DNA of 64,000 nt from IMGVR_UViG_3300042868_009074:186001-250000; one strand, 5' to 3'; shown: positions 11,346 to 34,336, numbered from the stretch's first letter. Made by a program: numbers and translations. Notes: generated by a model from the sequence alone, not told the origin.

Positions 11346-11639
11346 ATGAGCCTAAACTTTTGGGAACTAATCTATAAGTTCTTTAGTGAAGACCATGATG
11401 AAGGTAAAGATATCGTAGAATATCAGTTTGAGGGTATAGATGACAGTCAATGTGTCATCACTGCTCACAAAGAGGGTGAAAGTGTATTAGTTATTAATCT
11501 CATTGAAATGGATCAATGGGAAATGATTCAAGATATAGCTGATATCACAAACACCCAGATCTCAGATGTAGTTAAAGGATTATCTCCGCAAGAAATCGAT
11601 CAAATACGCCTGGATCTGGGTGAGATGGATTTAGATTAA
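11346..11639 (+). CDS. Acidic hypothetical protein
   Basis: 97 aa ORF, divergent from 11276. Confidence 0.65.
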   Translation: MSLNFWELIYKFFSEDHDEGKDIVEYQFEGIDDSQCVITAHKEGESVLVINLIEMDQWEMIQDIADITNTQISDVVKGLSPQEIDQIRLDLGEMDLD

Positions 11640-12269
11640 CGCCATCTTACCTTTTGTGTCATTAAGGTAAGTCTTTTGATGAATATCGTATAATACGACT
11701 CCATATGCTTCTTGAGCGTAACGTTGTGTGGTTAACGGTGAAATCAATGTTGGAATCAACTGATTCACATGTGCGCAAGCTAATGGTGAGTATTTTAGGC
11801 TCTTGCCGTAGAGATTGTAGATCTTAGTCTTTTTATATACAGACTTAACTGTATTGCCGTATACCTTTTCTTGATCTTCTCGCAAGTTATTGATGAAAAC
11901 CGCCCCATCAAATGTGAAGCCATAATTCACATAGAGATCGAATAACATCTCACAGTCTTGACCATGACCTATAAAGATCTTTTTATTATATCCAGACTCA
12001 AAGCTATTCTTTAAGGACGGATATATCTCATTAGTCTTTTCTATTGAAAGTTTATTATTATTGTATGGTATTAGAGCTATATCATGTTCATTAGCAAATA
12101 ACTTAGTAAAGCTATTGGTAAGGGACTTAGTGAATAGTCTTTCGGATCCTAGGATCAGGTTGTCTTGTGTCTTTAATAGCACTTTTATATCCTTTGATTT
12201 GTTTGGCATTTGATTAATAGTTTCTCTTGTATCAGTAGGATTCTGAGAATCCATAGTTATCTGTGTCAT
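11631..12269 (-). CDS. Hypothetical protein, possibly a degenerate alpha/beta-hydrolase fold
   Basis: IFIGHGQDC resembles a GHSxG elbow without the Ser. Confidence 0.6.
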   Translation of the reverse strand: MTQITMDSQNPTDTRETINQMPNKSKDIKVLLKTQDNLILGSERLFTKSLTNSFTKLFANEHDIALIPYNNNKLSIEKTNEIYPSLKNSFESGYNKKIFIGHGQDCEMLFDLYVNYGFTFDGAVFINNLREDQEKVYGNTVKSVYKKTKIYNLYGKSLKYSPLACAHVNQLIPTLISPLTTQRYAQEAYGVVLYDIHQKTYLNDTKGKMALI

Positions 12270-12450
12270 AGTCTAGGTATCTATCGTTATTTGAGTAACC
12301 ATAGTATACGGAAGCATATGTGTGGGCGTCTTCTATTGGTTCATCAGCATATACGAGACAGTCTGGACAACGTAGTGTTGTTTCAGCTGCGCCTTCATCT
12401 ATTATGAACTCTGATGAGCATTTTGTACAGGTGGTATATTCCATAGTCAT
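12232..12450 (-). CDS. Small zinc-ribbon protein
   Basis: CTKC...RCPDC; AAAGGA RBS. Confidence 0.65.
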   Translation of the reverse strand: MTMEYTTCTKCSSEFIIDEGAAETTLRCPDCLVYADEPIEDAHTYASVYYGYSNNDRYLDYDTDNYGFSESY

Positions 12451-12508
12451 TGGATTCTATCCTTTTGTTTTTTGGGGCGGATCATCGCCTTTGTGGTTAG
12501 TGAGTGAA

Positions 12509-12537
12509 ACATTATCGGTTGATTTGTGGTTTGTCAA
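12509..12537 (-). promoter_or_regulatory. Sigma70-type promoter for the leftward genes
   Basis: TTGACA-17 nt-TAATGT on the minus strand. Confidence 0.45.
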
Positions 12538-12766
12538 CCTAGGTGGGAATATTTGTAAGAAAAATTTTTTGGACTGTAATGATTGTATGTGAACCTATAT
12601 ATACATATATAAAAGTCATATAGGGGAAAAGTTGAGAAAATTTATAAAGGGGTAATAGTATATTATATGTATATGTTTATATCTTTAACATGCCCACCGG
12701 GTCTATGTAGGATATATATATGTTTTAAAGTTTATAATGTCACTATGAGTACTAGGAGGTACCGAC

Positions 12767-12961
12767 ATGTCCCTATTCACACCACTAACACAAGCCGAGT
12801 TCGAGGCTAAGTGCGCTGCAAAGCGTGCGAAAGGCGTATCAGCACGTCAGAAGAACAACGCACAAGTAACTGCAGTAACACAGCAGGTACGCATGCAAGT
12901 AGTACAACCAGCGTTGGGCTACATCACAGCTCGCGACAAGAGCGTCCCTACAACCATCTAG
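12767..12961 (+). CDS. Cassette protein, 64 aa, copy 1
   Basis: AGGAGG RBS; paralogue of 13403-13597 with mostly synonymous or conservative changes. Confidence 0.85.
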   Translation: MSLFTPLTQAEFEAKCAAKRAKGVSARQKNNAQVTAVTQQVRMQVVQPALGYITARDKSVPTTI

Positions 12962-13061
12962 TCTTCGGACTGCTCTGGTCCCTCACTTCCCCGTAAGGGG
13001 GGTGAGGGTTAAAGGAGTATATATCTTTAAATTATAGTATGCTCGTGAAAGGAGTATTATC

Positions 13062-13208
13062 ATGTTTACACTATTAACATCATTGTTCACTATCATCGGA
13101 TTCGCACTCACCAAGGGTGTATGGATCTTCGGTGCGTACACGCTCGTACGTAAGTACGACGTAGTGAACGTAATCAAGGCTCGCGTTCAGGACTCTTCGG
13201 AGTTCTGA
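13062..13208 (+). CDS. Cassette membrane peptide (48 aa)
   Basis: GAAAGGAG RBS; MFTLLTSLFTIIGFALTKGVWIFGAY... Confidence 0.7.
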   Translation: MFTLLTSLFTIIGFALTKGVWIFGAYTLVRKYDVVNVIKARVQDSSEF

Positions 13209-13402
13209 GCGTAAGCTAAGAAAAGGTATATATATTTAAATCTTATAGTGAGCAGCAATGCACACGTGTCGTTAGAGTTTGTATTTAGGAGGAACAATGT
13301 CAGCAACCGTTCAGGTCTAGAGTTGAGGTGTGTTGTTGTTTCAACAATGTTATATATCTTTAAATATTATAGTGTCTCTATTAGTACTTAGGAGGTACAG
13401 AC

Positions 13403-13597
13403 ATGTCATTATTCACACCACTATCACAGGCCGAGTTCGAGGCTGCGTGCGCTGCAAAGCGTGCGAAAGGCGTCCAAGCACGTCAGAAGAACAACGCTGC
13501 AGTCCAGGCTGTATCACAGCAGGTACGTATGCAGGTCATTGCTCCGGCAATGGGTTACATCACGACTCGTGACAAGAGCGTTCCAACAACCATCTAG
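13403..13597 (+). CDS. Cassette protein, 64 aa, copy 2
   Basis: AGGAGG RBS; paralogue of 12767-12961. Confidence 0.85.
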   Translation: MSLFTPLSQAEFEAACAAKRAKGVQARQKNNAAVQAVSQQVRMQVIAPAMGYITTRDKSVPTTI

Positions 13598-13717
13598 TCT
13601 TCGGACTACTCTGGTCCCTCACTTCCCCGTAAGGGGGGTGAGGGTTAAAGGAGTATATATCCTTTAAATCTTATAGTGACGCAAGGAAACCCAAGTACTT
13701 GTATCAGAAAGGTAAAC

Positions 13718-13969
13718 ATGTTTACATTAGCGCAAGTTGACGCACTCATCAACACGGCTATCAGCAAGGGCGATCTGCTCCACTACAACGGTGGTCAGGC
13801 TTACATCCGTTACGGTAACAACGTGATCATCATTGATCATGCTTGTCTTCCAGTAACAATGGAAGTCCACACCGGTGGATGGGCAGAGTCCTACATTGCA
13901 GAAAACCGTGGTGGTGGATACACTCACCACACGTCGCACTTGGCCGAGCTCCATCCGGAACTCGTCTAA
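13718..13969 (+). CDS. Cassette hypothetical protein
   Basis: GAAAGG RBS before MFTLAQVDALI; GCAA-tetraloop hairpin follows. Confidence 0.75.
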   Translation: MFTLAQVDALINTAISKGDLLHYNGGQAYIRYGNNVIIIDHACLPVTMEVHTGGWAESYIAENRGGGYTHHTSHLAELHPELV

Positions 13970-14057
13970 TCGCCAGCCTGTTCCCCCGCAAGGGGGACGG
14001 GCACCAAGGATTATAGTTCTTTAAATTATAGTATGAATTCCATGAAAGGGGATAAAC

Positions 14058-14162
14058 GTGAAGACTTTACGTTCTGCGTACTATGTTACGTACATCGTGT
14101 CAGCGATTCTTTCGTTCGTTGCTTTGGCTTTTGCCTACAAGCATCGCGACGAGATTCTCTGA
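14058..14162 (+). CDS. Cassette membrane peptide (34 aa)
   Basis: GAAAGGGG RBS, GTG start, one hydrophobic helix. Confidence 0.6.
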   Translation: MKTLRSAYYVTYIVSAILSFVALAFAYKHRDEIL

Positions 14163-14455
14163 CCAACCGCTCCGGCTGCCTCTCCCCCAGGCAAGTCGGG
14201 TAAGTCGGTTACTGTTATATATCTTTAGTTTATAGCCCACTATCACGGCTAGCCTATGTCCACATAGTGGGATAGGGTAGGCATAGTGATGTATATATGT
14301 ATGTATGTATTGTACATACCTTTAAATCATAGTATGAGCGATATGCAACTGGGTACCAGAGCTATCGTGGACTTGGTCTTTACTTCCCTTTTGGGAGGTA
14401 GAGACTACTGATTTATATATCTTTAAATTATAGTTTGCTCGTGAAAGGAGTTATT

Positions 14456-14617
14456 ATGTGGACATGTGGACACTGCACTAAGGAAATTGAAGACAAGTAT
14501 GATTACTGTGGATGGTGTGAATACTGTGGATGCACGTTGGATGATCATCGTTGCGTTTGCAAATGTGGTTCTACCGATGTGGAAGATCATGATTGCACTG
14601 GAGTTGGCTCAGCGTAA
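14456..14617 (+). CDS. Cassette Cys-rich peptide
   Basis: GAAAGGAG RBS; CGHC, CGWC, CGC, CVCKC. Confidence 0.7.
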   Translation: MWTCGHCTKEIEDKYDYCGWCEYCGCTLDDHRCVCKCGSTDVEDHDCTGVGSA

Positions 14618-14679
14618 GCTGGGTTAACTTCCCTGATTTATATACCTTTAAATTTCATAGAGAACTTAGGAGGTTCATT

Positions 14680-14850
14680 ATGGCTAAGAAAGCTATTATC
14701 TGTCGGCACTCTATCTGGTCGTTGATTAGCGACGATTCACGTCGTGCACTCATCACCCTCATCGAGGCTAACGTTGAGTTTGCTAATCGTCAGCTCAAGT
14801 TTGAGTTGGTTAATGGTCAGCTCAAGAAGGCCCCAGCGAAAGCTGGGTAA
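14680..14850 (+). CDS. Cassette hypothetical protein (56 aa)
   Basis: AGGAGG RBS; ends KKAPAKAG inside a hairpin. Confidence 0.75.
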   Translation: MAKKAIICRHSIWSLISDDSRRALITLIEANVEFANRQLKFELVNGQLKKAPAKAG

Positions 14851-14907
14851 CCTTCAACTATTTATATATCTTTAAATTATAGTATGTCCCTACAGAATGG
14901 AGATTAC

Positions 14908-15162
14908 ATGTATTACGTGTATCTACGACGTCGTATTGCGGTAGCAGTTGTACTGTTTATCGCCTTTATCCCAGTCATCAAGGTGCTCGTTCAAGAGCCA
15001 CCTGCCGATTGCGACCATGCATTGCATGTTGTTGCAAGAGGCGAGACTATTTGGTCAATCGCACATGCGCATTGCACCTCCGGTATCATCACCGCCATTG
15101 ATCAATTGGTAGATCAGTATGGTGGTGTTATCGATGTCGGTGACCGCATTCAGTTGCCTTGA
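14908..15162 (+). CDS. Membrane-anchored LysM-domain protein
   Basis: YLRRRIAVAVV TM segment, then HVVARGETIWSIA...IDVGDRIQLP. Confidence 0.8.
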   Translation: MYYVYLRRRIAVAVVLFIAFIPVIKVLVQEPPADCDHALHVVARGETIWSIAHAHCTSGIITAIDQLVDQYGGVIDVGDRIQLP

Positions 15163-15488
15163 CCAGGTCAAGTACACTCAGCCTTTTAGGTTGGGTGTAT
15201 TTGGCTATTGTATATATCTTTAAATCTTATAGTGGGAGAGATGGCACAGACAAGACTCATCCCGCTGCAGACGTGCAGTCCGGTTCGTCATGAACTGGGA
15301 TCTTGTTGGTAGTCACTGATCTTACCCGCTTAAGAGCGGTGCAGTGACTATTTACCTAATTGTTATATATCTTTAAATTATAGAGTGAGAAGCAATTGCA
15401 AACCGATGGGGCACTGGACTGCAGTGCATTGTTTCTTATTGTGTATATATCTTTAAATTTTATAGTGTGACTTGTGAAAGGAGTTATT

Positions 15489-15668
15489 ATGTCTAATGTA
15501 GACGAAGACGGACGTGGAGCATGTGTGAAATGTGGTCGTAATCAAGTATTGATTGATGAACTATGTGAAATGTGTGACAATGGGTTCACCCTAAAGGAAA
15601 TCAACATGTTTGAAACATGGTTGGCCGTTGGGGCACCCGGCGAGACCCCCTGGAGTAATCCAGGGTAA
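15489..15668 (+). CDS. Cassette zinc-finger peptide
   Basis: CVKC...CEMC; GAAAGGAG RBS. Confidence 0.7.
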   Translation: MSNVDEDGRGACVKCGRNQVLIDELCEMCDNGFTLKEINMFETWLAVGAPGETPWSNPG

Positions 15669-15764
15669 GTCCGTTGTATTTATACACCTTTAGTCCATAG
15701 TCCACTATCACGCGCAGGGTGATTATATATCTTTAAATACTTTAGTGAACTAAGGAGGTTCATT

Positions 15765-15920
15765 ATGTATTATGATTTTGACAAAGATGCTTGGTATTGT
15801 TCGACTTGTCACATCGATCTCAAGCAGATGGTTATTGACTATGACCCAGATTGTGGTGAATGCGAGTCTGCCATTTACACACTTCTGGTCAGTGGTGATC
15901 ACGACGTTTCGGCGTCGTGA
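15765..15920 (+). CDS. Cassette zinc-finger peptide (51 aa)
   Basis: AAGGAGG RBS; WYCSTC...DCGEC. Confidence 0.7.
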   Translation: MYYDFDKDAWYCSTCHIDLKQMVIDYDPDCGECESAIYTLLVSGDHDVSAS

Positions 15921-16111
15921 TTATCCACTTGTATATATCTTTTAAATTTTATAGTGAGTTGCCAACAAAACCAACCAGCGAAGTGGTTCTTCGGGTCTAG
16001 CACAGCACTAGGCGATAATGCAACTAAGATCTTCGGGAGTCATTCTCCCGAGGATCTATGCTGAAAGGTATATATCTTTAAATTATAGTTCGACTTTTGA
16101 AAGGAGTTATT

Positions 16112-16306
16112 ATGAGATTATTTATTATGCCAGATGGAAAAGGCGAAGGCGTCGATGCTGTGGTCTGTGAACGTTGTATTGAAAATGACTACGACATCAA
16201 CGAGAACAACGGTATGAGTGACCTTGAGCAGCAGCGCTACTTAAACGGGCTCGATGTTGCACCTGCTGCATCGTATTGTTGGTTGTGTGGAGTTGACTCG
16301 GCTTAG
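16112..16306 (+). CDS. Cassette zinc-finger peptide
   Basis: CERC...CWLC; GAAAGGAG RBS. Confidence 0.7.
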   Translation: MRLFIMPDGKGEGVDAVVCERCIENDYDINENNGMSDLEQQRYLNGLDVAPAASYCWLCGVDSA

Positions 16307-16372
16307 GCTGGGTTAACTCTCATGTCTTATATACCTTTAAATACTTATATGAACTCTTGAAAGGAGAACACA

Positions 16373-16606
16373 ATGAAGAATGCGATTTTATTCTTTCGTA
16401 ACATTGGCAATCCACACGGCATGGAATGGCGCAAGATTGGCTGTTTCAACATTTGGGCTTTTAGCGACTGGGCTGATTACGCAGGCTCTGGCTTGCATTG
16501 GAGCACCCATGACCGTTGCCTCGTGTTGAAAACATCCGCGAACAAGCGTAAATCTTGGAAGACCATTACACTTCTGCGTTTGCCCAAGGAAGGGACCTCA
16601 GCTTAG
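16373..16606 (+). CDS. Cassette hypothetical protein
   Basis: GAAAGGAG RBS; 77 aa. Confidence 0.7.
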   Translation: MKNAILFFRNIGNPHGMEWRKIGCFNIWAFSDWADYAGSGLHWSTHDRCLVLKTSANKRKSWKTITLLRLPKEGTSA

Positions 16607-16811
16607 GCTGAGGGACTTTTCCTTGTTTATATATCTTTAAATTTCATAGTGGTAGGCTGTACCGACGGCTATTCGATGGTCGGAGTAAATGGTGGGTCAA
16701 CACAGCGCAGGCTCCATCAGCTGGGTACCAGAAAGCTCAGAACGTTTATCGTTCTGGGTTTTTCTATTATTATATATCTTTAAATTTCATAGCGAACTAA
16801 GGAGGTTCAAC

Positions 16812-16970
16812 ATGTTTGTTACTAACTGTCCTCGTTGCGGGCAACTTGCGCCTGACTTTGAGAGTCCATCACATCAAGACGAATGGTGTTTTCATCATCG
16901 TTTGAATGGATTTGGCGAAGTCGTTGTTTCTGACGACGATTACCAGTCATCGGACGACGAGCCCTTTTAG
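16812..16970 (+). CDS. Cassette peptide with CPRC motif
   Basis: AAGGAGG RBS before MFVTNCPRCG. Confidence 0.7.
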   Translation: MFVTNCPRCGQLAPDFESPSHQDEWCFHHRLNGFGEVVVSDDDYQSSDDEPF

Positions 16971-17029
16971 GGTTCGTTGTTTGAGCTTTATATATCTTTA
17001 AATTTCATAGTGACCTAAGGAGGTTCATT

Positions 17030-17371
17030 ATGGCAACAACGCCATCCGTCACATCCCTACTATTACAACAGGAAGATTTGCAAACGCAAATTGATTCTGT
17101 TGACAGCAAGATTGCTGCGCTTCATCAGACCATGAAGGAGTGCGAGTCTCAAATCAACGCTTATGAGCAGGACCGTAAGCGTCTTGATTATTTGACTTGG
17201 GAGATTCAGAAGGCTTTGGCCAAGGCTGTCTGCCCTACTAACCAAGTTCTTCTTCGGTTCTCTAGTACTCTCAACGCTCTTCGGAATCCTGACCATCCGA
17301 GCTATGGAGCACTAGCGATTGACCAACGCTTTGCAGCCCTTGGCTTTACTCAGTCTTCTTCGGAAGGCTGA
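17030..17371 (+). CDS. Cassette coiled-coil protein
   Basis: AAGGAGG RBS; heptad pattern. Confidence 0.8.
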   Translation: MATTPSVTSLLLQQEDLQTQIDSVDSKIAALHQTMKECESQINAYEQDRKRLDYLTWEIQKALAKAVCPTNQVLLRFSSTLNALRNPDHPSYGALAIDQRFAALGFTQSSSEG

Positions 17372-17425
17372 GTTTAGCTGGATTATATATCTTTAAATTA
17401 TAGTGGGACGAAAGGAGTCATCATC

Positions 17426-17614
17426 ATGAATGACTGGGTAACACCAAAAATGGTGGACCAAGCTTTAGACTTTGCAGAACTACATCAACGTTCAAACAAG
17501 TTTTGTCGTGCAATGTTTCTGACCTTCAGGGCTAAGGGTAACTTGTCTGACAAGCAGGTTCTCAAGCTGTTGGAAATCAAAGCTGGTTACCGCCGCAGTG
17601 CTCGAGCTTCTTAG
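17426..17614 (+). CDS. Cassette hypothetical protein
   Basis: GAAAGGAG RBS; GNLSDKQV motif. Confidence 0.75.
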   Translation: MNDWVTPKMVDQALDFAELHQRSNKFCRAMFLTFRAKGNLSDKQVLKLLEIKAGYRRSARAS

Positions 17615-17867
17615 CTCGGGTTACTGTGGTCTTTATATATATCTTTAGCTTATAGTTGTCGTCCACTATCACGCGCCAGCTTGTATGCACATAGTGCTAT
17701 ACAGATGGTGTAGTGATTATACTGTGTGTATATCTTTAAATCTTATAGTGCCGACTGGAGTTGTAACAAGGACTGTCCGGGCACACAAGGATTGCATCTC
17801 TGACGAGAGATGTAGTCTTGTATCTATATAGATCTTTAAATGTCATAGTGTCCTTAGGAGGTACACT

Positions 17868-18020
17868 ATGTCCGCTATTTGCGCACGTTGTCGCTTGGAA
17901 AGCAACAACATCACACCACAGTCCATCGACCACATCCGTGGTCATTACGCAGCATTCCATGCTGCTTCGTCGAAGCCTCGCAAGGCTCGTGCGAAGAAGG
18001 CCCCAGCGAAAGCTGGGTGA
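17868..18020 (+). CDS. Cassette basic peptide (50 aa)
   Basis: AGGAGG RBS; MSAICARC...KKAPAKAG. Confidence 0.7.
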   Translation: MSAICARCRLESNNITPQSIDHIRGHYAAFHAASSKPRKARAKKAPAKAG

Positions 18021-18332
18021 CCTTCAACCGTTTATATGTCTTTAGTTTATATCTATAGTCTCACGTTTCAGGGATTGGAAACCAGTGAACTAAGTGAATA
18101 GTATGAGGAGTCCGCGAACGATTGTCCTACTGAACGCTGTAATAGTATCTTATATATGTTTATATATATGTTGGAGCAATGTCTTAGACTTGATCAGGCA
18201 TAGTTATTTTGCCGGCAAACAATTACGTCTATATTATTAATAGACATATATCTTAAGTTTTAATATTATATTATTCTAAATTTTCAAATAGGGACCCAAT
18301 CCGTGGGTTTCTTGTAGTAGTTTGGAGAAACT

Positions 18333-18758
18333 ATGAAAGTCCGTATCAACGCTCTTGCTTCTGGCAAGGGCTCAACTCAGCAAGCACCAATCCAAAAGCG
18401 TTCCGCTGATGGTCAACGCTTCGCTTTCTTGGTTAGCATTATGGATGCTACCAACACTGTACCAGTCGACCTTCGTTTCGACTCGGTTGCCTCTGATGGC
18501 GTCAAGTACCAGAACTTCTCTGGTGCGTATGAACTCTGGTTTTCAGCAGAAGAGAACTCTGAGATTGTTTCTCGGTTCAACACAGCAAAGGCTTCTGGCC
18601 AAGTTGTGTACTATGAGTTCACTTGCTTGACCGCTGACAAGTCTGTCCCCTATCTCTCTGAGAAGGGTGTCACTTATCAGACCATCATCCTGAATGCTGA
18701 CCGCTTTGCGGAACGCATTTGCGGTTTGGCACCAGTGCCCGCCATCAAGTTCGTTTGA
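18333..18758 (+). CDS. Hypothetical beta-rich protein
   Basis: GGAG RBS; 141 aa; hairpins downstream. Confidence 0.75.
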   Translation: MKVRINALASGKGSTQQAPIQKRSADGQRFAFLVSIMDATNTVPVDLRFDSVASDGVKYQNFSGAYELWFSAEENSEIVSRFNTAKASGQVVYYEFTCLTADKSVPYLSEKGVTYQTIILNADRFAERICGLAPVPAIKFV

Positions 18759-19452
18759 TGAGATTTGCCACCAAGTTCTCTTGGTGAAGACACCAGTCTG
18801 GTCACTTCGGTGACTAGGCTGTGTGTAACCCCCTCTATATATCCTTAGGTTTGATTTCACCTAGCACTGATCCGCTGAAACAATCCTTGTGTCCTACCTT
18901 GTGTAGTTGTGTACTGACGAGTACATTACTACATTAGGTAACACTCGTACCTACATAGATTCTAAATCTATAATCGATCTCAAGTTCTCTGGGGTTGGGC
19001 CCCCAGTTAGATGATTGCAGGTATCATATCGATATCTTTAGCCCGTTGTCCCGCTTTAAGGCATTTCCATTTGGATTTGCCGGCCAGGCAACAAAAGCAA
19101 ACATATGATAGTTTGGTAGATACCTACGGCTGATTGCCAAGAAACTACCCTTTTCGTTAGTATAAGTATACTTATCCCCTAATGTATCTATAGCAATATA
19201 TATATTATTGTTGGACAAATGCTTATATTAATATCTCTCAGGGGTATACCCATTATAAAACTATGCATATGTAACCTGCCAAGGTGTTATGCATTTGGGT
19301 ATACTAGACACGGCAAATGTAAGTATACCCAATATGGGAGATTATCTCCCCCTATATTAGGTGTCTCTATACTCTCTTATTCCTTTCTAGAGTATATGAT
19401 ATACCCCTGAGAATATTCGTGTTCGTTGGTTTTGCCGGCGAACCACAAGATT

Positions 19453-19734
19453 TCTTAAGAAGAGTCTGTATAGCGAGTCTGTAACTGATTAGACTAAAAC
19501 CCGATTGAGTTACCCTTAAGTTTCCAATTGAGAAGTGCCTAATCAAGTGCCACTTTAGCCGAGACTACAGAACTGTCTCTTTGAGACTATGGTTGATACG
19601 AAATCCCGTGATAACCTCTGCGAACGAATGCATTACCCTGGTTCAATTGTTGGATTGTACAATCCCAACCCAGCGTATGTTAGCCATCTAGTACCCATTG
19701 TTATCCTTGCAAAATAGGACCAATCTTCTTAAGA
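19453..19734. ncRNA. Candidate ~280-nt structured RNA
   Basis: 11-bp terminal stem TCTTAAGAAGA/TCTTCTTAAGA, nested stem ATGGTTGATACG/CGTATGTTAGCCAT, no ORF. Confidence 0.5.
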
Positions 19735-19982
19735 TTAAAGTTTCCAACTGCACACTGCTTATTGTGTGTGCGTGTAGAAATATCGCACGGTTAGCGATAA
19801 AAACCCCTCACTGGTATATTGAGGCTCTTCTAACCGAATATACCACTTATGGTTTGTTACTTACTTAATTTAAAAGTAACTCATGCTGAGTATCATGATG
19901 TAAAGTGCTTCCATTCTATAAGATATTTGCCTGCGGGCAATTGACCATACGCCCATACAAAACCAGAATAACAGGAGTTATT

Positions 19983-20207: not shown

Positions 20208-20436
20208 CAAAATGCATTTCCTATTTATAGGTTACCTGGATGGTAGTAAGCCAGGGTAAAATGCTAGCTAACGGAGCCTGAGTATGCTCTGCACAAATAT
20301 GCTCACCTTCGGGTGCCTGGAAGGTAATGACCACCCTGAATATAGCCTTCCCCCGCTATATCAGCTGTGAGATACATAATTGGGTTCAAATCCCATTACA
20401 CCCACTAAAATCAAATCTATAGTTAGGAGAACTATA

Positions 20437-20634: not shown

Positions 20635-21252
20635 ATGAATCAACCTAATGACAAAAAAGTAATATGGGATCCTGAAACAGAGTCTTACAAAGTTGTTTCA
20701 AATCCTGAATGGGATATTGAAGCTGAAGTTGGCATTTACTCATCGCTTGTTCAAAGCGGTGTTAATGATACTTTAGCAACTGACATTCTATCTATGTTTA
20801 ATACCACTAGACCTGTCTATTCGTGCTATTGTCACAGTGAACACACAGAAATTGGCTATGGATTTAATCCATGCCCTTGTGCAGACTGTGAAGCAATTGC
20901 TCGTATTGAAGGTTATAATATCTCAGAACCTATAGACAACATTCAATTGCACAAAAATTCAGTTCATGTTGTTGGCCATATGGTTCAACAACAGCTTTCT
21001 GCTATTAATAAAGTTATTGCTTCTGACAATATTTATATTTCTGAAGATGACTTTAAAACTTTTCAATCTCTTTTAGAAGACTATGGCAAAACAGATTTGT
21101 CTTGGTCTGAAATCTTAGATTATATGGCCGTTGATCCTAGAAACTCATCTGAACCAGATCATTTTTATGCTGTTGCTGCAGTTTTAGAATACTTCTGGAT
21201 TGCATTTGTTCTCAAGAACCCAACAGTTACGGGTCATCGTCCAAAACAATAA
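20635..21252 (+). CDS. Hypothetical protein with Cys motifs
   Basis: 205 aa; CYCH, CPCADC. Confidence 0.7.
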   Translation: MNQPNDKKVIWDPETESYKVVSNPEWDIEAEVGIYSSLVQSGVNDTLATDILSMFNTTRPVYSCYCHSEHTEIGYGFNPCPCADCEAIARIEGYNISEPIDNIQLHKNSVHVVGHMVQQQLSAINKVIASDNIYISEDDFKTFQSLLEDYGKTDLSWSEILDYMAVDPRNSSEPDHFYAVAAVLEYFWIAFVLKNPTVTGHRPKQ

Positions 21253-21270
21253 AGAAAAAAATGAAAGAGT

Positions 21271-21792
21271 ATGCTTAATCATTCTCAAGAATTAGTGGAT
21301 AAATATCCACTACTCAACTGTACAAACTGTGGGATACCCAATCCCACGACTCAACAACAGGGTATGTTTATTGACGACGGTATTTCTATCAATACCTTGT
21401 CACTTGGACACTATGGCGGATTCACTGACTGCATCCCCGATCAAACTCGGGGTGAAGTGTACTCAATTTCTGAGTATGATTCTAATCCATACCTAGCACA
21501 TTTGTGCCATGACTGCAGTGTGATACTTTTCAATGCACTACCTGGACTTGCAAAATTTGCAGGAGTTCATGGTGGTCATGGCAACATCACCGGAGGATGG
21601 TGTTTCTCAGGTGGCGAACTTAGCCACATTGAGAATGGAACACTTGTTCCACCTTGTTGTCCATACGCTTGGACTTGGGATCAGACTGAAAAGTCTGGTC
21701 CATACAATCAATCCACTACTTACATAGCTACACCCGAATTAACTTGGGTAAAGCGACAATATTTGGATGATGACTTAGAGGATTTCCTCTAG
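21271..21792 (+). CDS. Hypothetical Cys-containing protein
   Basis: CTNC, GHYGGFTD, LCHDC. Confidence 0.7.
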   Translation: MLNHSQELVDKYPLLNCTNCGIPNPTTQQQGMFIDDGISINTLSLGHYGGFTDCIPDQTRGEVYSISEYDSNPYLAHLCHDCSVILFNALPGLAKFAGVHGGHGNITGGWCFSGGELSHIENGTLVPPCCPYAWTWDQTEKSGPYNQSTTYIATPELTWVKRQYLDDDLEDFL

Positions 21793-21843
21793 GTCATTAT
21801 CCTTAGCCCAAACAATAACCCACTAACATTAGGAGAAATTAAA

Positions 21844-22038
21844 ATGTGGTATTGGTATCTTTCAGGTATGATTTCAGCTTTCTTGCTGGTATCTGCCGTA
21901 ATCAATGTAGGATTTGTGTTTGGTTTTATAACCTATACAAAATCTAAATCAAAATCATCCCAACTTACAGGAGCTGATAAAGCCCTGTATGATTGGGCCA
22001 AACAAGACATCACTGGTGAAACCCAAAGGAGTAACTAA
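21844..22038 (+). CDS. Small membrane protein
   Basis: AGGAG RBS; N-terminal TM helix. Confidence 0.65.
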   Translation: MWYWYLSGMISAFLLVSAVINVGFVFGFITYTKSKSKSSQLTGADKALYDWAKQDITGETQRSN

Positions 22039-22553
22039 TGTTATTATCTATGATGATTATCTTAGCAATTACATCGTGTGCTTTAGAGCTCATGATTGCT
22101 GCTAAGGTTCCAATCTGGCGTCAAATGTCAGCTAAATATCCATTGTTCAACCTACTAAACTCTCTTGTTATCTCATTCATAATGGGTATAGCATTTGGTG
22201 CAGCAGGTCTTGTAGCAATGGGTGCTGGTGTTATCTCAACTGTACTTTCAGTTCCAGGTTATCAGTTCCTTAAATGGAACTATGACACACCTCGTGCTCG
22301 TGCACACGGTGGAAGTGAATACAAATATCACCATGCTATCTTTAAGTCTAAACTAGAAAACTATAAAGTTACCCTCGCTAAATGGGGTGTAGCTTTGAAT
22401 GATCTAGGTAAACTTATGTATAGCTTTATCCGATTCCTTACTTTCCCTATCTGGATGACCCGCGACTTTATCGTATGGGTTCGTCCATATGTGGTTAAGT
22501 ATAACAACTATGTAGCTAGAAAACGTCTGGCTAAGATAAGGACAACACCATGA
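22038..22553 (+). CDS. Membrane protein
   Basis: AGGAG RBS; several hydrophobic helices. Confidence 0.75.
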   Translation: MLLSMMIILAITSCALELMIAAKVPIWRQMSAKYPLFNLLNSLVISFIMGIAFGAAGLVAMGAGVISTVLSVPGYQFLKWNYDTPRARAHGGSEYKYHHAIFKSKLENYKVTLAKWGVALNDLGKLMYSFIRFLTFPIWMTRDFIVWVRPYVVKYNNYVARKRLAKIRTTP

Positions 22554-22617
22554 AACGTGTAGCACAATACATTGGGCTCACTATCACTTCCGTAGCGTTT
22601 GCTTTTGGGTGGTCAAA

Positions 22618-22821
22618 ATGACCATTTCCAATACAATAGGTGCATACCAAGCAAACCCTAGTAACGGTATATATAGACACAAATGTATAGAACCATCTTG
22701 CTCAGAATTCGTCTTGTACGATGACGAGCCTTGGTGTTTCGACCATTCCCCTGATGAAGGTTCATCCCTTCCAGGATATTCCGCTTATCAACTAGATCTC
22801 TTAAAGGAGACAGCACAATGA
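22618..22821 (+). CDS. Small hypothetical protein
   Basis: ATGA-type overlap; CIEPSC...WCFDH. Confidence 0.55.
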   Translation: MTISNTIGAYQANPSNGIYRHKCIEPSCSEFVLYDDEPWCFDHSPDEGSSLPGYSAYQLDLLKETAQ

Positions 22822-22931
22822 GTATCATTAAAAATACTGTTGTTGCAATCAGTCAGCGTGTTCGCATCTTTGGTGCGTTCATCACTGGCTTTGTAACAAA
22901 GAAATAAATAAATTCATTAAAATAAAAAACA

Positions 22932-22963
22932 ATGACCTAGGGATCACCCAATCCCTAGGTCAT
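22932..22963. terminator. Perfect 13-bp inverted repeat (terminator or processing hairpin)
   Basis: ATGACCTAGGGAT/ATCCCTAGGTCAT. Confidence 0.55.
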
Positions 22964-23022
22964 AAAGCCCAATTAAAAACCCAAATATTATCCCTATTTA
23001 TACAGAAAGAATTATTGACACT

Positions 23023-24084
23023 ATGTCTATTCTAAATACACTTGTTAAGTCCTTCGACCCAGAAGGTTCACTTGGAATTGCAGTAGATTCACCCGAAATA
23101 CTGCAGTCCACACCAAAAACAGCTAACTTAATCCTTGGCCGTCGTGTTCCATTTCAGGCTTCCTTTAATGGCAACATGCTTCCTGGTTTCGTTACCTTAA
23201 AATCTGCAAATCTCCAGCGTCTTAGCGTTGAAGATCACACTTCTGCAAATGGCACAAAGCCATTAGTATCAGGTATCTTTAACAACGTTCAAATGGACGT
23301 AGAAGTAATGATTGGAACTGAAATTATTAGCCTTCAAGAACTTCTTCTTGCAATGTCTAATGCTTCAGCTCAAAACCAAGTTACATTGGAAGAATTCATG
23401 CCTACACTCGAAAGCCTTGGCTTCCGTTTCAACTCAGGTATGACCTTCTTCTGGCAACAGTTTGGCTCTAATATCGATAGCTACAACGAACTTCGTGACT
23501 CATTCAAGTCACTTGGTGCAGTAAGTGGTCTCGGTACTAAGAACTTGCCTGCTAAAGTTAAAGAAGTTTGGGAAATGCCAAAGAACCTTACTGGTCCTGC
23601 AATTGTAGGCTTTGAAGTTAGCCGTGCAAAGCGCGAAGAATCTAAGACAGGTCAAGGTTTCCTTGATTTCGTAGATGCCATTACAGCTAACTACAAGCGT
23701 ATTGTAGATCTTCGTAAGACTTCAGCAGCTATGAAGAACGATATCACTACAAACTCTGTTGTAGAAGCATGGTCTCCTGAGAAAATTAAAGCCGTTGAAG
23801 AGCATGCAAATGCTTTGATGCGCATTTCTCAGAACTGGTCAAGCGTTTGGTCTGGTTCTTCTCAAGGTAAAGTTATCGACGAGAAAGATCCTTCTGTTAT
23901 TGAACTTCAAGACCAGTGGTATGCAACCAAAGCTAACTGCGGACGTTTCTCTGTTGTCGTTAACGACAAAGTAATGCCAGTTGATCTTTGGACAAACTCA
24001 TTGCAAGCTAATACCTCAGGTAATACGACTGCATCTGCACCAGCTTCGGCTGTTGCTGGTGAAGCTCCAATTTCCTGGGAATAA
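23023..24084 (+). CDS. Hypothetical protein (353 aa) immediately upstream of the polymerase gene
   Basis: Long ORF with a low-complexity tail ending APISWE. Confidence 0.85.
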   Translation: MSILNTLVKSFDPEGSLGIAVDSPEILQSTPKTANLILGRRVPFQASFNGNMLPGFVTLKSANLQRLSVEDHTSANGTKPLVSGIFNNVQMDVEVMIGTEIISLQELLLAMSNASAQNQVTLEEFMPTLESLGFRFNSGMTFFWQQFGSNIDSYNELRDSFKSLGAVSGLGTKNLPAKVKEVWEMPKNLTGPAIVGFEVSRAKREESKTGQGFLDFVDAITANYKRIVDLRKTSAAMKNDITTNSVVEAWSPEKIKAVEEHANALMRISQNWSSVWSGSSQGKVIDEKDPSVIELQDQWYATKANCGRFSVVVNDKVMPVDLWTNSLQANTSGNTTASAPASAVAGEAPISWE

Positions 24085-24227: not shown

Positions 24228-26771
24228 TTGGCCATTAACCCCAAAACAAGAACTATCTGCTATGCTGATGGACCTATTCGCTCTACAGGTGGATATCAAG
24301 TAGGTTTCTACGATATATCTCACCTTCGCCAGGCATTACAATATTCTGGCGAATCATTCTATCGGGTAGGCTCTTTGCCTATCCCACAAAACGAACATGA
24401 ATTTACCCAAATTCAACAAATCATTAATGATCCTTCTATTCAGTATGCTCTAGTTGACAAGAACAAAATTGTTATCTGTCAAATTGGCAACAATACTGAA
24501 TGGCTTAGTATCTTTACTGATATGGGTTATACTGTCCACGGTGGAGGCAAGACTGCTAAGCGGTTGAAGACTCTCCATCGACCTACTTTAATCAATGCTC
24601 ACTTTGATCTTGATGAAATCAAAATACGCTATTGTGAAGCCGGCGACTTTAGTCGCTATTTCGATAGCGATGAAGAAGGCTATTGGCTTATAGATGCTGA
24701 AGACTATCAAGAATTTTATCAAAATCCTGAAGTTTGGGATCGACTCTTAGACGGTGGCTTTGCTATCCATCCACGATTGATCCATAAAGGTATTGATAAC
24801 CTACCTATCTTTGATCCCGCTGAAAACGAGGATCCAGGTGAGTACTATCTTAATCCTACTATGCGTATGGATTGCATCCGTAATCTATATAATGCTAAAG
24901 TATTTAATATTAGACTTACTGGACCAATGGGTCAGCTTAAAGGCAACTGCTTTGTTACCGATAAACTTCCTGAAGGTGTAGATGTATTGACTTGGCATGG
25001 AAATGTCAAGACAGAGATCTCATATTCTGAAGGCTATCAACTCATTGCTGAGCCTCAAGGACCTAAGTCCAAAGTCCGTACGGACGATCAAACTCTTATT
25101 AATATGCCACAACTCTTTACCAAGAGTGATATGGAATATTGGCTAGACGAGGAATATAAGAAACTCTTCAACGATGCCATCAACAATAAGCTTTTGATGA
25201 ACTGGAAGAATGTATACCAACGTTCTTTCCGTGATGATACTAACCTTGAAGATGAAGAGTCTTATGCACGGTTTCAATATCAAGGTTATCGCTGGAAAGC
25301 AATGGGGATGAAGGTAACTGATTCCCCTTGGTTATTCCAGACCCTTGCTACTAGCCATGCTAAACCCCTTCAAGAACGTATCCCAATCCCTTGTTCTGTA
25401 TCTGAACAGATTATTAGCGAGTCTATGGCTCGCTTATCTGGTTATGATGTAGAAGTCGAAGAAGGAACTATTCAACGCATCAATGACCTTGGTGTACACG
25501 TAGTTAATGATCTCGATTGGATTGAGATGTATGAGAGCCATGGTGGCTGCGACGGTGACGACTTCTTTGGTTTATTCTATAGGACTCCAGTTGGTGGACA
25601 ATATGATAAAGAAAAGGTTGTCTTTGCACGTCGATCTCCAAATGGTCTTGGTGAGTACTCTGTATTTAGATATGTAGAAGGACAATGGTCTCCAACTTGG
25701 TTGACCAGTGACGGTACTCAAGTTAAGTTTCCTGAGTGTTCTGGACGTGGTTGGCCTATGCGCCTATCTACCGCCATTCACGCAGGGAAAGTTAGCTATG
25801 TAGGACTTCCTTCTTCTACTGCTCCTAAAGCTGAACGTACTGAAACCTATACTAGACAAGATGTCTTTAATGATATCCGATCTAGTATGACAGGTGGAGG
25901 CGTTGGCGGTTTCGTCAATGCTGTAATGCTACATACTTCTGTGTTCCATTCTCATCGTCCACTTCAACTGTGTAGTTTGGAAGATGCAATCGACGGTTGC
26001 ACTCAGACAAACGAACCAGCTGACCGTGAAGCGATTGAGCTTGAAGCTAAAGTATTGGTTGATGAAGTTATTAGTTCTGGACTTCCAGTAGACCGTTCAT
26101 TATGGGATGCTAAGAAGTTTGACTACTATCTCAAGCCAGGCCAATTTGTAGAAAAGCACGAAGGTAAAATCACTCAGCTTAATATGATCACGAAAACTAA
26201 ATATCGTGAGTATGTAAAGATGATTACCGAATGGGCTCAAAAGAACTGTCAACCTGATGAAGTTATTCATAAGATTGGCTATCGCTTGAGCTTCAATGCT
26301 ATTCCTATCTTAAAACAATTCCGTAAAGATATTTACAACTTGAATCAATCAGACATGAATGAATCTAGTGGTTATCTTGACAGCAGTAGCTGGGACTTCC
26401 TGTATCAATCAATCGTTGATAAGATTGAACTACATGACAATGAGTCTGATCGACACGATCTAGTACTTGGTCTCTATTCTGCCAGCTTGAAGCACCCAAC
26501 TTCAAATGGTAAAGTAAGTGACCAAATCGTATTCAATCGACATGTCTTTCCGTTCCTTGAACGAGCACTCCAATATTATGGATTGGCTAACGTAGTTTCT
26601 TTCATTAGAAACAAAGATGGCACAGTCCGAGTAATGCAGAGCAAGACATCTGAATGGATTGGCATCGATGAAGATGGCAGTTATCATACCTTTGATGAAG
26701 CCATTGAATACCAAAGATTCCGTGGTAAGATTAGCCCTATTGTGTTTACCAACGCAAAGAAAACTGCTTAA
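24228..26771 (+). CDS. Single-subunit two-barrel (DPBB) RNA polymerase, QDE-1/YonO-like
   Basis: AAGGAGG RBS. Motifs LDGGFAI (DG.G.I), FNIR...LKG (fQiR...KG), HGGCDGDD (metal-binding loop), RRSPNGLGE (R.P....G[DE]), VGGFVNAVM (lG..aNa), DAIDG (AVD). Confidence 0.7.
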   Translation: MAINPKTRTICYADGPIRSTGGYQVGFYDISHLRQALQYSGESFYRVGSLPIPQNEHEFTQIQQIINDPSIQYALVDKNKIVICQIGNNTEWLSIFTDMGYTVHGGGKTAKRLKTLHRPTLINAHFDLDEIKIRYCEAGDFSRYFDSDEEGYWLIDAEDYQEFYQNPEVWDRLLDGGFAIHPRLIHKGIDNLPIFDPAENEDPGEYYLNPTMRMDCIRNLYNAKVFNIRLTGPMGQLKGNCFVTDKLPEGVDVLTWHGNVKTEISYSEGYQLIAEPQGPKSKVRTDDQTLINMPQLFTKSDMEYWLDEEYKKLFNDAINNKLLMNWKNVYQRSFRDDTNLEDEESYARFQYQGYRWKAMGMKVTDSPWLFQTLATSHAKPLQERIPIPCSVSEQIISESMARLSGYDVEVEEGTIQRINDLGVHVVNDLDWIEMYESHGGCDGDDFFGLFYRTPVGGQYDKEKVVFARRSPNGLGEYSVFRYVEGQWSPTWLTSDGTQVKFPECSGRGWPMRLSTAIHAGKVSYVGLPSSTAPKAERTETYTRQDVFNDIRSSMTGGGVGGFVNAVMLHTSVFHSHRPLQLCSLEDAIDGCTQTNEPADREAIELEAKVLVDEVISSGLPVDRSLWDAKKFDYYLKPGQFVEKHEGKITQLNMITKTKYREYVKMITEWAQKNCQPDEVIHKIGYRLSFNAIPILKQFRKDIYNLNQSDMNESSGYLDSSSWDFLYQSIVDKIELHDNESDRHDLVLGLYSASLKHPTSNGKVSDQIVFNRHVFPFLERALQYYGLANVVSFIRNKDGTVRVMQSKTSEWIGIDEDGSYHTFDEAIEYQRFRGKISPIVFTNAKKTA

Positions 26772-34310: not shown

Positions 34311-34336
34311 TCAATACCACCTACGGAAACTATTCT

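What the first reader, a model, noticed from the sequence alone, without database searches (positions are those of the whole stretch)
12710..18060. Array of ~25 modular mini-cassettes, each opened by one AT-rich motif and closed by a hairpin
Seen: TATATATCTTTAAAT(n1-3)ATAGT recurs every ~80-400 bp in one orientation. Units follow the pattern motif, short leader with SD, one tiny ORF (or none), GC-rich hairpin (often a UUCG, GNRA or TTAG loop). The motif has a -10-like TATAGT but no -35, unlike the TTGACA promoters elsewhere in the window, and I did not see a full copy outside this block. Inference: either a battery of monocistronic early host-takeover genes under a phage-specific promoter, or an integron-like shuffling array in which the motif is the crossover site, or both.
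Basis: partly seen in the sequence, partly recalled or inferred. Interest (0 to 1): 0.87.

Follow-up and report, generated by a model that had tools for sequence, protein, structure and literature searches.

The report
Shuffling promoter-terminator cassette array in phage
A 5.3-kb stretch of a large uncultured lake phage holds about 27 tiny expression units, each opened by the same 24-base signal and most closed by a hairpin; close relatives carry different sets and orders of these units joined exactly at that signal, a style of phage genome plasticity known from T4-like phages but seen here in a new lineage with a non-standard promoter.

Summary
There are 27 same-strand copies of the motif between 12715 and 18047 and none elsewhere in the window. 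The exact form occurs nowhere else in the 268-kb source contig.

The motif is not "box + variable spacer + TATAGT". It is a fixed-length element: TATATATCTTTAAAT, then 8 nt, then an invariant G (53/53 copies in six genomes). In a diverged relative the box is unchanged but TATAGT is absent.

Sixteen units carry SD-led ORFs of 34-113 aa, nearly all ORFans. The rest would give short structured RNAs. The ORFs have GC3 0.49 against 0.22-0.28 elsewhere and avoid the codons read by the phage's tRNAs.

Four relatives with 94% identical recA DNA carry 14-27 units with different content and order. Homology blocks start and stop at the box.

No integrase or attC was found. The nearest known system is the PeSL cassettes of T4-type phages.

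Canonical TTGACA/TAnnnT promoters are conserved on neighbouring genes. An 847-aa ORF 6 kb downstream folds as a two-barrel RNA polymerase. The box is therefore probably a phage-polymerase promoter, but no RNA data were available to test this.

Verdict: new variant of a known kind; interest 0.6.

The parts
12270..12714 (.). Divergent control region between the leftward gene block and the array. It carries a leftward sigma70-type promoter TTGACA-17-TAATGT, starting at 12537 on the minus strand.
   Evidence: both hexamers are conserved while the spacer varies in L099, L097, L092 and L016; a ~75-nt block at 12593-12667 is conserved even in L016.
12715..18060 (+). Array of 27 units. Box starts are 12715*, 13018, 13227, 13351, 13654*, 14012, 14216v, 14313, 14414, 14639, 14863, 15211, 15364, 15444, 15680v, 15724, 15932*, 16069, 16328, 16628, 16771, 16989, 17384, 17636v, 17727, 17827 and 18033v (* = 1-nt insertion; v = CTTTAG variant). 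Each canonical copy is the 15-nt box, then 8 nt, then an invariant G.
12767..12961 (+). u1, 64-aa ORF, paralogue of u4.
13062..13208 (+). u2, 48-aa hydrophobic ORF (family C, also in L099, L097 and L019).
13403..13597 (+). u4, 64-aa ORF, paralogue of u1. The stretch from u1 to u4 is skipped in a contig of run X16 (joint 12972 to 13609).
13718..13969 (+). u5, 83-aa ORF. It is the most widely shared cassette among the relatives and changes mostly at synonymous sites.
14058..14162 (+). u6, 34-aa hydrophobic ORF with a GTG start.
14216..14312 (+). Variant box plus a CACTAT...ATAGTG hairpin element. Further copies are at 15680-15723 and 17636-17726. Function is unexplained.
14456..14617 (+). u9, 53-aa Cys-rich ORF (family D). 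It lies before cassette E here but after E in L099, L097 and L092.
14680..14850 (+). u10, 56-aa ORF. Its last 8 codons and its hairpin are shared with the unrelated u26.
14908..15162 (+). u11, 84-aa ORF with a membrane anchor and a LysM-like domain (family E).
   Evidence: LysM E 7.6e-4, 19.8 bits against a cut-off of 20.9.
15211..15443 (+). Two ORF-less units (15211-15363 and 15364-15443) predicted to give structured RNAs of 57-130 nt.
   Evidence: z -2.9 and -2.4.
15489..15668 (+). u14, 59-aa ORF with two CxxC pairs.
15765..15920 (+). u16, 51-aa CxxC ORF (family O, also in L016).
15932..16068 (+). ORF-less unit giving a structured RNA.
   Evidence: z -4.4.
16112..16306 (+). u18, 64-aa CxxC ORF (family F). 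It occupies three different slots in W, L099 and L097.
16373..16606 (+). u19, 77-aa ORF.
16628..16770 (+). ORF-less unit ending in a hairpin plus T-run. It is 96% identical in L099.
16812..16970 (+). u21, 52-aa CxxC ORF (family A). Its last 93 nt, hairpin and following box are 97.8% identical to L092, while the 5' part has diverged.
17030..17371 (+). u22, 113-aa ORF, the largest cassette.
17426..17614 (+). u23, 62-aa ORF (family B, shared with L099, L097, L092 and L016).
17868..18020 (+). u26, 50-aa CxxC ORF (family G).
18333..18758 (+). 141-aa ORF just past the array. It has no box but shares the array's codon signature (GC3 0.53) and is conserved in L099, L092 and L016.
24228..26771 (+). 847-aa ORF, a predicted single-chain two-barrel RNA polymerase and a candidate enzyme for the box promoters.

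Best explanation
The block is a hyperplastic early-gene region of an uncultured ~268-kb lake phage whose host is probably an actinobacterium. Each unit is a self-contained expression cassette. It opens with a 24-nt promoter: TATATATCTTTAAAT, then 8 nt, then an invariant G that I take to be the transcript start. A 17-23-nt leader with a strong SD follows, then a tiny ORF or a short structured RNA, then a GC-rich hairpin that ends or stabilises the transcript. The repeated promoter, leader and hairpin modules are the only sequence shared between otherwise unrelated cassettes. They therefore act as crossover points for homologous recombination, which duplicates, deletes, replaces and reorders cassettes, as PeSL modules do in T4-type phages.

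The promoter is most likely read by a phage-encoded polymerase, not by the host primary-sigma holoenzyme. That polymerase could be the 847-aa two-barrel enzyme encoded 6 kb downstream or an unidentified virion enzyme.

Shown here: the motif geometry, its confinement to the array, the cassette anatomy, the codon signature, variable content and order in relatives, junctions at the box, and the polymerase fold. Inferred: promoter activity, G as +1, early timing, and which polymerase acts.
For: Motif: 53/53 copies from six genomes have G at +9 after the box, with T at +8 in 43 and A at +10 in 38. The PWM hits only the array, and the exact motif is absent from the rest of the 268-kb contig.

The box is fully conserved in L016, whose flanking protein is only 49% identical. 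There the following bases read ACTTTGGTGA and the like, with no TATAGT.

The distance from G to the start codon has a mode of 17-23 nt and a median of 20 (n=68).

Hairpins precede most boxes. ORF-less units fold with z -2.4 to -5.4.

Array ORFs have GC3 0.49 against 0.22-0.28 elsewhere. TTA/AAA/AGA usage is 0.12/0.25/0.04 against 0.30/0.63/0.45, and those are the codons of the phage's own tRNAs.

Relatives with RecA 99.7% identical in protein and 94% in DNA carry 27, 22, 14 and 14 units. Cassette D lies on either side of E, and F sits in three different slots. The 3' end of cassette E is the same in three genomes up to the box, after which three different cassettes follow. Of 38 homology-block ends, 25 lie within 5 nt of a box, against 17% expected by chance.

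Unrelated ORFs share hairpin and leader modules. One lake run has a contig that skips 636 nt between the paralogous units u1 and u4, with 53 nt identical at both sides of the joint.

Host-type TTGACA-17/18-TAnnnT promoters on the neighbouring leftward genes keep their hexamers while the spacers vary across all relatives.

The 847-aa ORF gives a model with pLDDT 90.7 and pTM 0.90. Its top three PDB matches, all at probability 1.00, are two-barrel polymerases: RDR2, phage P32 gp64 and P74 gp62. Atlas look-alikes carry PF05183. The family has an invariant acidic triad and two invariant lysines.

Precedents: PeSLs (PMC2839356) and the AT-rich pre-early promoters of a phage two-barrel virion polymerase in P23-45 (PMC10770324).
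Against: There is no RNA evidence, because no RNA run holding the region was listed. The promoter, the +1 position and the timing are therefore all inferred.

In this genome and its close relatives, 'TAAATT' (the end of the box plus one base) or TATAGT could serve as an actinobacterial TAnnnT -10 element, so host sigma-A is not excluded.

The polymerase family has DxDD, not the canonical DxDxD. Its Foldseek TM-scores are low, 0.28-0.38. Nothing links it specifically to the box. A relative whose polymerase is 43% identical has no box array within 10 kb upstream of the gene.

Because the box is conserved in every cassette, homology blocks would end at boxes even if the exchange happened nearby. 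The junction statistic places breakpoints at cassette borders, not at a particular base.

The 636-nt joint comes from contigs and spans a 53-nt repeat, so it could be an assembly collapse.

Many of the hairpins lack a clean U-tract.
Confidence: 0.6

Rival explanations
1. These are the same cassettes and the same recombination, but the box is an ordinary host promoter. The actinobacterial primary-sigma holoenzyme would use a -10-only promoter (TAAATT at the end of the box, or TATAGT), with the conserved upstream part acting as an AT-rich spacer or UP-like enhancer, or as a regulator site.
For: Actinobacterial promoters often lack a conserved -35 (general knowledge). In this window and its close relatives TAAAT+T fits TAnnnT about 7 nt upstream of the invariant G, and TATAGT is frequent. 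PeSL promoters in T4-type phages are host sigma70 promoters. The array's host-like codon usage fits genes expressed first by host machinery.
Against: In L016 the base after TAAAT is A in 7 of 11 copies and T in only 1, and TATAGT is absent, yet the box and G+9 are unchanged. TATAGT floats between two registers relative to the invariant parts. The same genomes keep canonical TTGACA/TAnnnT promoters on neighbouring genes, which shows what a host-type promoter looks like in this phage. A 15-nt block that stays invariant across phages whose flanking protein is 49% identical is more than a sigma -10 element needs.
Confidence: 0.27
2. The box is an RNA-level signal, not a promoter. One upstream promoter would make a long transcript that is cut at each AU-rich box next to a hairpin, as RNase III or RNase E process early phage transcripts. 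This would leave monocistronic RNAs with protective 3' hairpins.
For: Many hairpins lack a U-tract and could be stabilisers, not terminators. A conserved element with weak sigma70-like hexamers lies just upstream of the first unit.
Against: Ribonuclease sites are not normally 15-nt invariant blocks with a fixed-distance invariant G. Several hairpins do score as intrinsic terminators, 15 against 7.7 expected. Cassettes function in many different orders and contexts, which suits autonomous units.
Confidence: 0.07
3. This is an integron-like site-specific system. A dedicated recombinase would excise and insert cassettes at the box or at the hairpins.
For: The array is cassette-like, with junctions at a repeated site and hairpins at the cassette ends.
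Against: No tyrosine or serine recombinase domain was found in any of the 46 ORFs of 120 aa or more in the 64-kb window. The only transposase-like hit is a partial IS110-type domain 11 kb away. The hairpins are heterogeneous and have no shared attC-type core. Every cassette carries its own promoter. Mosaic tracts extend into ORF ends and leaders, as expected for homologous exchange.
Confidence: 0.03
4. The boxes are primarily protein-binding sites with another role, such as stoperator-like repressor sites or replication-origin iterons. They would only incidentally lie upstream of genes.
For: The sites are one-orientation repeats in intergenic positions, next to a strand switch and a GC-skew minimum. 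Cluster A mycobacteriophages have oriented stoperators (general knowledge).
Against: The sites are spaced by whole genes, not in tandem. Their distance to the SD and start codon is fixed. They are confined to one block, not spread over the genome.
Confidence: 0.03

Closest known systems
PeSL (promoter-early stem-loop) regulatory cassettes of T4-type phages (Arbiol et al. 2010, PMC2839356; Comeau et al. 2014, PMC4122927)
   Same: Both are composite promoter-plus-stem-loop modules repeated in intergenic positions of a hyperplastic region, each placed upstream of a small ORFan. In both, indels, replacements and reorderings between close relatives are bounded by the modules, and the proposed mechanism is homologous recombination between them.
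   Different: PeSL promoters match the host sigma70 consensus with -35, -10 and an AT-rich upstream region. Here there is no -35, and a 15-nt box plus a fixed G replaces them. This phage is not recognisably T4-like, since its large proteins have no PHROG, Pfam or INPHARED matches. About 40% of the units carry no ORF. PeSL mini-circles have been demonstrated, whereas here they are untested.
AT-rich pre-early promoters of Thermus phage P23-45, read by its tape-measure-fused virion two-barrel RNA polymerase (Chaban et al. 2024, PMC10770324)
   Same: Both are strongly conserved AT-rich motifs repeated upstream of many start sites in one early block. In both, the phage also encodes a gp64-type two-barrel polymerase, and the 847-aa ORF here matches P32 gp64 and P74 gp62 by fold.
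   Different: The sequence motifs were not compared, because the paper's logo is not in the text I could read. No virion polymerase has been identified here. In P23-45 the start sites were mapped, here they were not. Cassette shuffling was not described for P23-45.
Integron cassette arrays
   Same: Both are one-orientation arrays of small mobile cassettes with a repeated junction site.
   Different: There is no IntI, no attI or attC, and the cassettes are not promoterless.
Phage 'morons' and T7/N4-type phage-polymerase promoters (general knowledge)
   Same: Each unit is a gene with its own promoter and terminator, which is the definition of a moron. Like single-subunit phage-polymerase promoters, this is a long fixed-length promoter abutting a conserved initiating G.
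   Different: Morons are usually single insertions with host-type promoters. T7-like polymerases belong to a different fold family from the polymerase predicted here.

Membership tests
PeSL cassettes (T4-type phages) | Repeated intergenic composite of a promoter and a stem-loop | tested here: met
   There are 27 boxes, and most are preceded within 5-18 nt by a GC-rich hairpin.
PeSL cassettes (T4-type phages) | Promoter identical to the host sigma70 consensus (-35, -10, AT-rich upstream) | tested here: not met
   There is no -35. The conserved part lies at about -23 to -9 relative to the invariant G, and the -10-like TATAGT is not conserved in L016.
PeSL cassettes (T4-type phages) | Concentrated in a hyperplastic region, upstream of ORFans | tested here: met
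   All copies lie in one 5.3-kb block. The ORFs have no confident Pfam or PHROG family.
PeSL cassettes (T4-type phages) | Differences between close relatives are bounded by the modules | tested here: met
   25 of 38 block ends lie at a box, p 4e-11.
PeSL cassettes (T4-type phages) | Excised mini-circles | not testable with these tools
   Only assembled contigs could be laid on the region. They showed one deletion joint and no back-joints.
Integron | Adjacent tyrosine-recombinase integrase | tested here: not met
   Pfam scans of all 46 ORFs of 120 aa or more in the window found none.
Integron | attC sites with a conserved core at cassette ends, and promoterless cassettes | tested here: not met
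   The hairpins are heterogeneous, and every cassette has its own box.
Sigma70/sigma-A promoter | -10 TAnnnT at a fixed distance, with or without a -35 TTGACA | tested here: inconclusive
   There is no -35. TAAAT+T fits in the window, L092 and L099, but the last base is A in most L016 copies.
Phage-polymerase promoter | Long fixed-length conserved element abutting a conserved start base | tested here: met
   The 15-nt box, 8 nt and G are present in 53/53 copies.
Phage-polymerase promoter | Primary 5' ends at the motif, and rifampicin-resistant transcription | not testable with these tools
   No RNA run was listed.
Two-barrel (DPBB) RNA polymerases, for ORF 24228-26771 | Two-barrel polymerase fold | tested here: met
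   The model has pLDDT 90.7. Its top Foldseek hits are RDR2, P32 gp64 and P74 gp62, at probability 1.00 and E 2e-6 to 6e-5. Atlas look-alikes carry PF05183.
Two-barrel (DPBB) RNA polymerases, for ORF 24228-26771 | DxDxD metal-binding motif | tested here: not met
   The family instead has an invariant D442-x-D444-D445 in HGGxDxDDxF, plus invariant K111 and K238. This is a variant acidic triad, and its catalytic role is untested.

The most novel reading that the evidence does not exclude
The 24-nt element is the natural promoter of an uncharacterised family of single-chain two-barrel RNA polymerases. That family has about 275 representative clusters and a DxDD motif instead of DxDxD. The enzyme would be either the 847-aa protein encoded downstream or a virion-delivered paralogue. 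In addition, the phage would exploit dozens of identical copies of this promoter as built-in recombination linkers to turn over its early counter-host gene set. The arrays in these relatives would then supply more than 60 natural promoter variants for defining how this polymerase family recognises DNA.
Probability: 0.35. Interest if true: 0.72.

Novelty: new variant of a known kind. Interest (0 to 1): 0.6.

Why it matters
Promoter-terminator modules that also serve as recombination linkers have so far been documented mainly in T4-type phages with host-type promoters. Finding the same logic in an unrelated uncultured jumbo phage, apparently with a private promoter, suggests it is a general way for large phages to turn over small early genes, which are the likely host-takeover and anti-defence repertoire.

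The array also gives a clean, testable candidate promoter for a little-studied family of two-barrel phage RNA polymerases.

Finally, the lake time-series metagenomes offer a natural population in which cassette gain and loss could be followed.

Tried and rejected
- Megablast of the array and tblastn of the 1214-aa protein against INPHARED phages found no match.
- PHROGs and Pfam on the large neighbouring ORFs and on the cassette ORFs gave almost nothing. The only near-threshold hit was LysM in u11.
- Rfam on the array, on the downstream non-coding stretch and on the whole window found only tRNAs.
- No RNA runs were listed, so 5' ends could not be examined. Read laying on four DNA runs showed identical order apart from one deletion joint.
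A relaxed pattern returned chance singletons. Single-protein locus searches with the two flanking genes found only identical copies.
- A literature search for the motif string returned nothing relevant.
- PDB sequence searches with the 847-, 1213- and 640-aa proteins, and with the polymerase-family profile, found nothing. Pfam on nine family members also found nothing.
- A k-mer search for another shared upstream motif among the other genes in the window found nothing.
- To test co-variation of polymerase and box, I looked at a relative whose polymerase is 43% identical (L100). It has no box array within 10 kb upstream, which is uninformative. Contigs for a 38% relative had no DNA available.
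- Variable-spacer promoter model: rejected in favour of a fixed register.
- Integron model: rejected (see the membership test).
- Iteron or replication-origin model: rejected on the spacing of the sites and their fixed distance to start codons.

Full report
**Source and context.** The window is part of IMG/VR contig UViG_3300042868_009074 (267,766 bp), with window position 1 at about contig position 186,004. Two further IMG/VR contigs carry the same sequence. At least 24 lake-water metagenome runs hold the array. The genome has no nucleotide or protein match in the INPHARED phage collection, and few of its large ORFs have family matches. The matches that do exist point to an actinobacterial host: WhiB (42867-43274), an Rpf-type transglycosylase (28337-29212) and DUF732 (36818-37318). 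Genes to the left of about 12.3 kb run leftward. The array and everything after it run rightward.

**The observation.** The 15-mer is strongly over-represented, with 45 hits at up to 3 mismatches against 10.6 expected. All exact copies are on the + strand inside the block. I count 27 units between 12715 and 18047, spaced 80-395 bp. Sixteen have an ORF of 34-113 aa behind a strong SD. Most units end in a GC-rich hairpin 5-18 nt before the next box, and terminator-like sites number 15 against 7.7 expected. A PWM built from 64 copies scores 20 sites at 22-36 bits, all in the array, and nothing above 12 bits elsewhere on either strand.

**The motif re-read.** The flanking 212-aa protein (11631-12269) has homologues at 92-96%, 67% and about 50% identity. 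The contigs that encode them carry a syntenic array on the same relative strand. In the 50% relative (L016) the 15-nt box is unchanged, but what follows is ACTTTGGTGA, CCTTAGGTGA or ACTCTAGTGA. There is no TATAGT and no A at the would-be -11 position.

I then re-aligned all copies without gaps. T occupies +8 in 43 copies, A occupies +10 in 38, and +3 is always a pyrimidine. In this genome TATAGT simply sits at +1 to +6 or at +3 to +8. The G lies 17-23 nt (median 20) upstream of the start codon in 68 ORF-bearing units. If G is +1, this gives a natural short leader that contains the SD.

**Cassette contents.** All ORFs are ORFans apart from u11, which combines a membrane anchor with a near-threshold LysM domain. 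Six ORFs have CxxC pairs. Array ORFs have GC3 0.49, against 0.22-0.28 for 43 other ORFs in the window. They avoid TTA, AAA and AGA, the codons read by three of the four phage tRNAs. The 141-aa ORF just past the array shares this signature. This is what one expects of genes translated before the phage's own tRNAs accumulate, and I take it as indirect support for early expression.

Two cassettes (u5 and the 141-aa ORF) change mostly at synonymous sites between relatives. Others (E and G) change mostly at the protein level. RecA differs by one residue in 325. The eleven ORF-less units would give 57-130-nt RNAs with significant predicted structure (z -2.4 to -5.4), and they have no Rfam match.

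**Comparison among relatives.** L099, L097 and L092 are very close to the window. RecA is 99.7% identical in protein and 94% in DNA for L099 and L097, and the flanking protein is 96% identical in L092. Yet the arrays have 27 (window), 22, 14 and 14 units. With letters for blastp families, the shared cassettes run as follows:

| Genome | Order of shared cassettes |
|---|---|
| Window | ...D N E ... O F ... A ... B ... G |
| L099 | ...N E F D A B ... G |
| L092 | ...E D A B G |
| L097 | ...E D A F B G |

D lies on either side of E, and F occupies three different slots.

At the nucleotide level, homology blocks begin at the first base of a box and end at the last base of the next. Examples are 14639-15233, 16069-16342 and 16621-16786 against L099. 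The 3' end of cassette E is the same in three genomes up to a few bases before the box, after which three different cassettes follow. Of 38 block ends, 25 lie within 5 nt of a box, against 17% expected for random positions (p about 4e-11). There is a caveat: because the box is conserved everywhere, this statistic places breakpoints at cassette borders, not at a specific base.

Mosaic tracts also cross module borders. The last 93 nt of u21, its hairpin and the next box are 97.8% identical to L092, while the 5' part of the ORF has diverged. The unrelated ORFs u10 and u26 share their last eight codons and their hairpin. Leader modules are exchanged between cassettes. In one lake run a contig joins 12972 to 13609 across the paralogues u1 and u4, with 53 nt identical at both sides, and the skipped part is present at lower depth. 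This could be a real deletion variant or an assembly collapse.

**Mechanism of shuffling.** No integrase or other site-specific recombinase domain occurs in any of the 46 ORFs of 120 aa or more in the window. The hairpins share no attC-like core, and each cassette has its own promoter. The pattern instead matches the PeSL elements of T4-type phages. Those are strong early promoters joined to stem-loops, scattered through hyperplastic regions upstream of ORFans, and recombination between them causes insertions, deletions, replacements and mini-circles (PMC2839356; PMC4122927). A phage recA lies 2.3 kb from the array.

**Which polymerase.** Two TTGACA-17/18-TAnnnT promoters serve the neighbouring leftward genes, starting at 12537 and 9167 on the minus strand. 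They keep both hexamers while their spacers vary in every relative, L016 included. The phage therefore does use host-type promoters, and the box is something else.

The 847-aa ORF at 24228-26771 belongs to a family of about 275 representative clusters. The family has an invariant D-x-D-D in HGGxDxDDxF and two invariant lysines. Its AlphaFold model is confident, with pLDDT 90.7 and pTM 0.90. The only significant PDB matches are two-barrel RNA polymerases: Arabidopsis RDR2, phage P32 gp64 and P74 gp62. These have probability 1.00 and E 2e-6 to 6e-5, though the TM-scores are low at 0.28-0.38. ESM-atlas look-alikes carry PF05183, and BFVD lists a siphovirus 'RNA-dependent RNA polymerase'.

In Thermus phage P23-45, a gp64-type enzyme and a virion two-barrel polymerase read dedicated promoters, including a strongly conserved AT-rich motif repeated through the pre-early block (PMC10770324). 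By analogy, I favour a phage polymerase for the box. This is an inference. The DxDxD motif is not canonical. No box precedes the polymerase gene, whose upstream region looks host-type. A relative whose polymerase is 43% identical has no array within 10 kb upstream. If the 847-aa enzyme reads the box, the array is delayed-early. If an unidentified virion enzyme does, it is immediate-early.

**Verdict.** The feature is real and non-random. It is best described as a PeSL-like array of autonomous promoter, leader, ORF or small RNA, and hairpin cassettes in a hyperplastic early region, with the repeated regulatory modules acting as recombination linkers. It is a new variant of a known kind for three reasons: a different phage lineage, a non-sigma70 fixed-length promoter, and many RNA-only cassettes. 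The main open point is which polymerase reads the box and exactly where transcripts start. No referred steps.

Noticed in passing
window 14230-14311, 15695-15722, 17656-17725; also L099, L097, L092, L019, L016, L018: A conserved hairpin element built from CACTAT and ATAGTG half-sites lies just upstream of certain boxes in every relative. In the window's clade it is usually preceded by a 'CTTTAG' variant box that lacks the invariant G. It may be an operator or an insulator. ATAGTG is also the sequence at the proposed start site of many boxes in this genome.
   Followed up: partly
window 18760-19960 (and L016 about 2400-3250, minus strand): A stretch of about 1.2 kb has no convincing ORF. It is partly conserved even in the 50% relative, for example the run containing GGGGTTGGGCCCCCAG. 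It may encode a large structured RNA. It has no Rfam match.
   Followed up: partly
window about 20210-20405; L016 about 700-860 (minus strand): A sequence resembling a tRNA T-arm plus acceptor end (GGTTCAAATCC... in the window, GGTTCGAATCC...CCA in L016) is conserved in both clades. Neither ARAGORN nor Rfam calls it. It could be a tRNA-like or tmRNA-like element.
   Followed up: no
window 47451-51907: Three adjacent genes carry a JAB deubiquitinase-like domain (47451-49151), a ThiF/E1-like domain (49135-49899) and an AAA ATPase (50285-51907). Together they resemble a ubiquitin-like conjugation or deconjugation module in a phage.
   Followed up: no
window 37337-38569 and 34304-35917: The phage encodes a cytochrome P450 (E 9e-25) and a subtilase (E 7e-34). 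Both are unusual auxiliary genes for a phage.
   Followed up: no
window 29553-30308: A 251-aa ORF carries only the C-terminal IS110-family Transposase_20 domain (E 7e-6). It lies 11 kb from the array, and nothing links the two.
   Followed up: no
window 42504-42580: Rfam calls a fifth tRNA at 35 bits that ARAGORN did not report.
   Followed up: no
window 12972-13609 (run X16): A contig joint skips 636 nt between the paralogous cassettes u1 and u4, and the skipped part is present at lower depth. This could be a population deletion variant or an assembly collapse across a 53-nt repeat.
   Followed up: partly
window 20635-26771: GC3 falls in steps along the rightward genes. It is 0.49-0.53 in the array and the 141-aa ORF, about 0.33-0.35 for 21271-26771, and 0.20-0.30 beyond. 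The steps may mark temporal expression classes.
   Followed up: no
window 1423-5067 (minus strand): The 1214-aa ORF has no family or PDB sequence match. Its atlas look-alikes are DnaQ-like 3'-5' exonucleases at low scores, so it may be a divergent DNA polymerase.
   Followed up: partly
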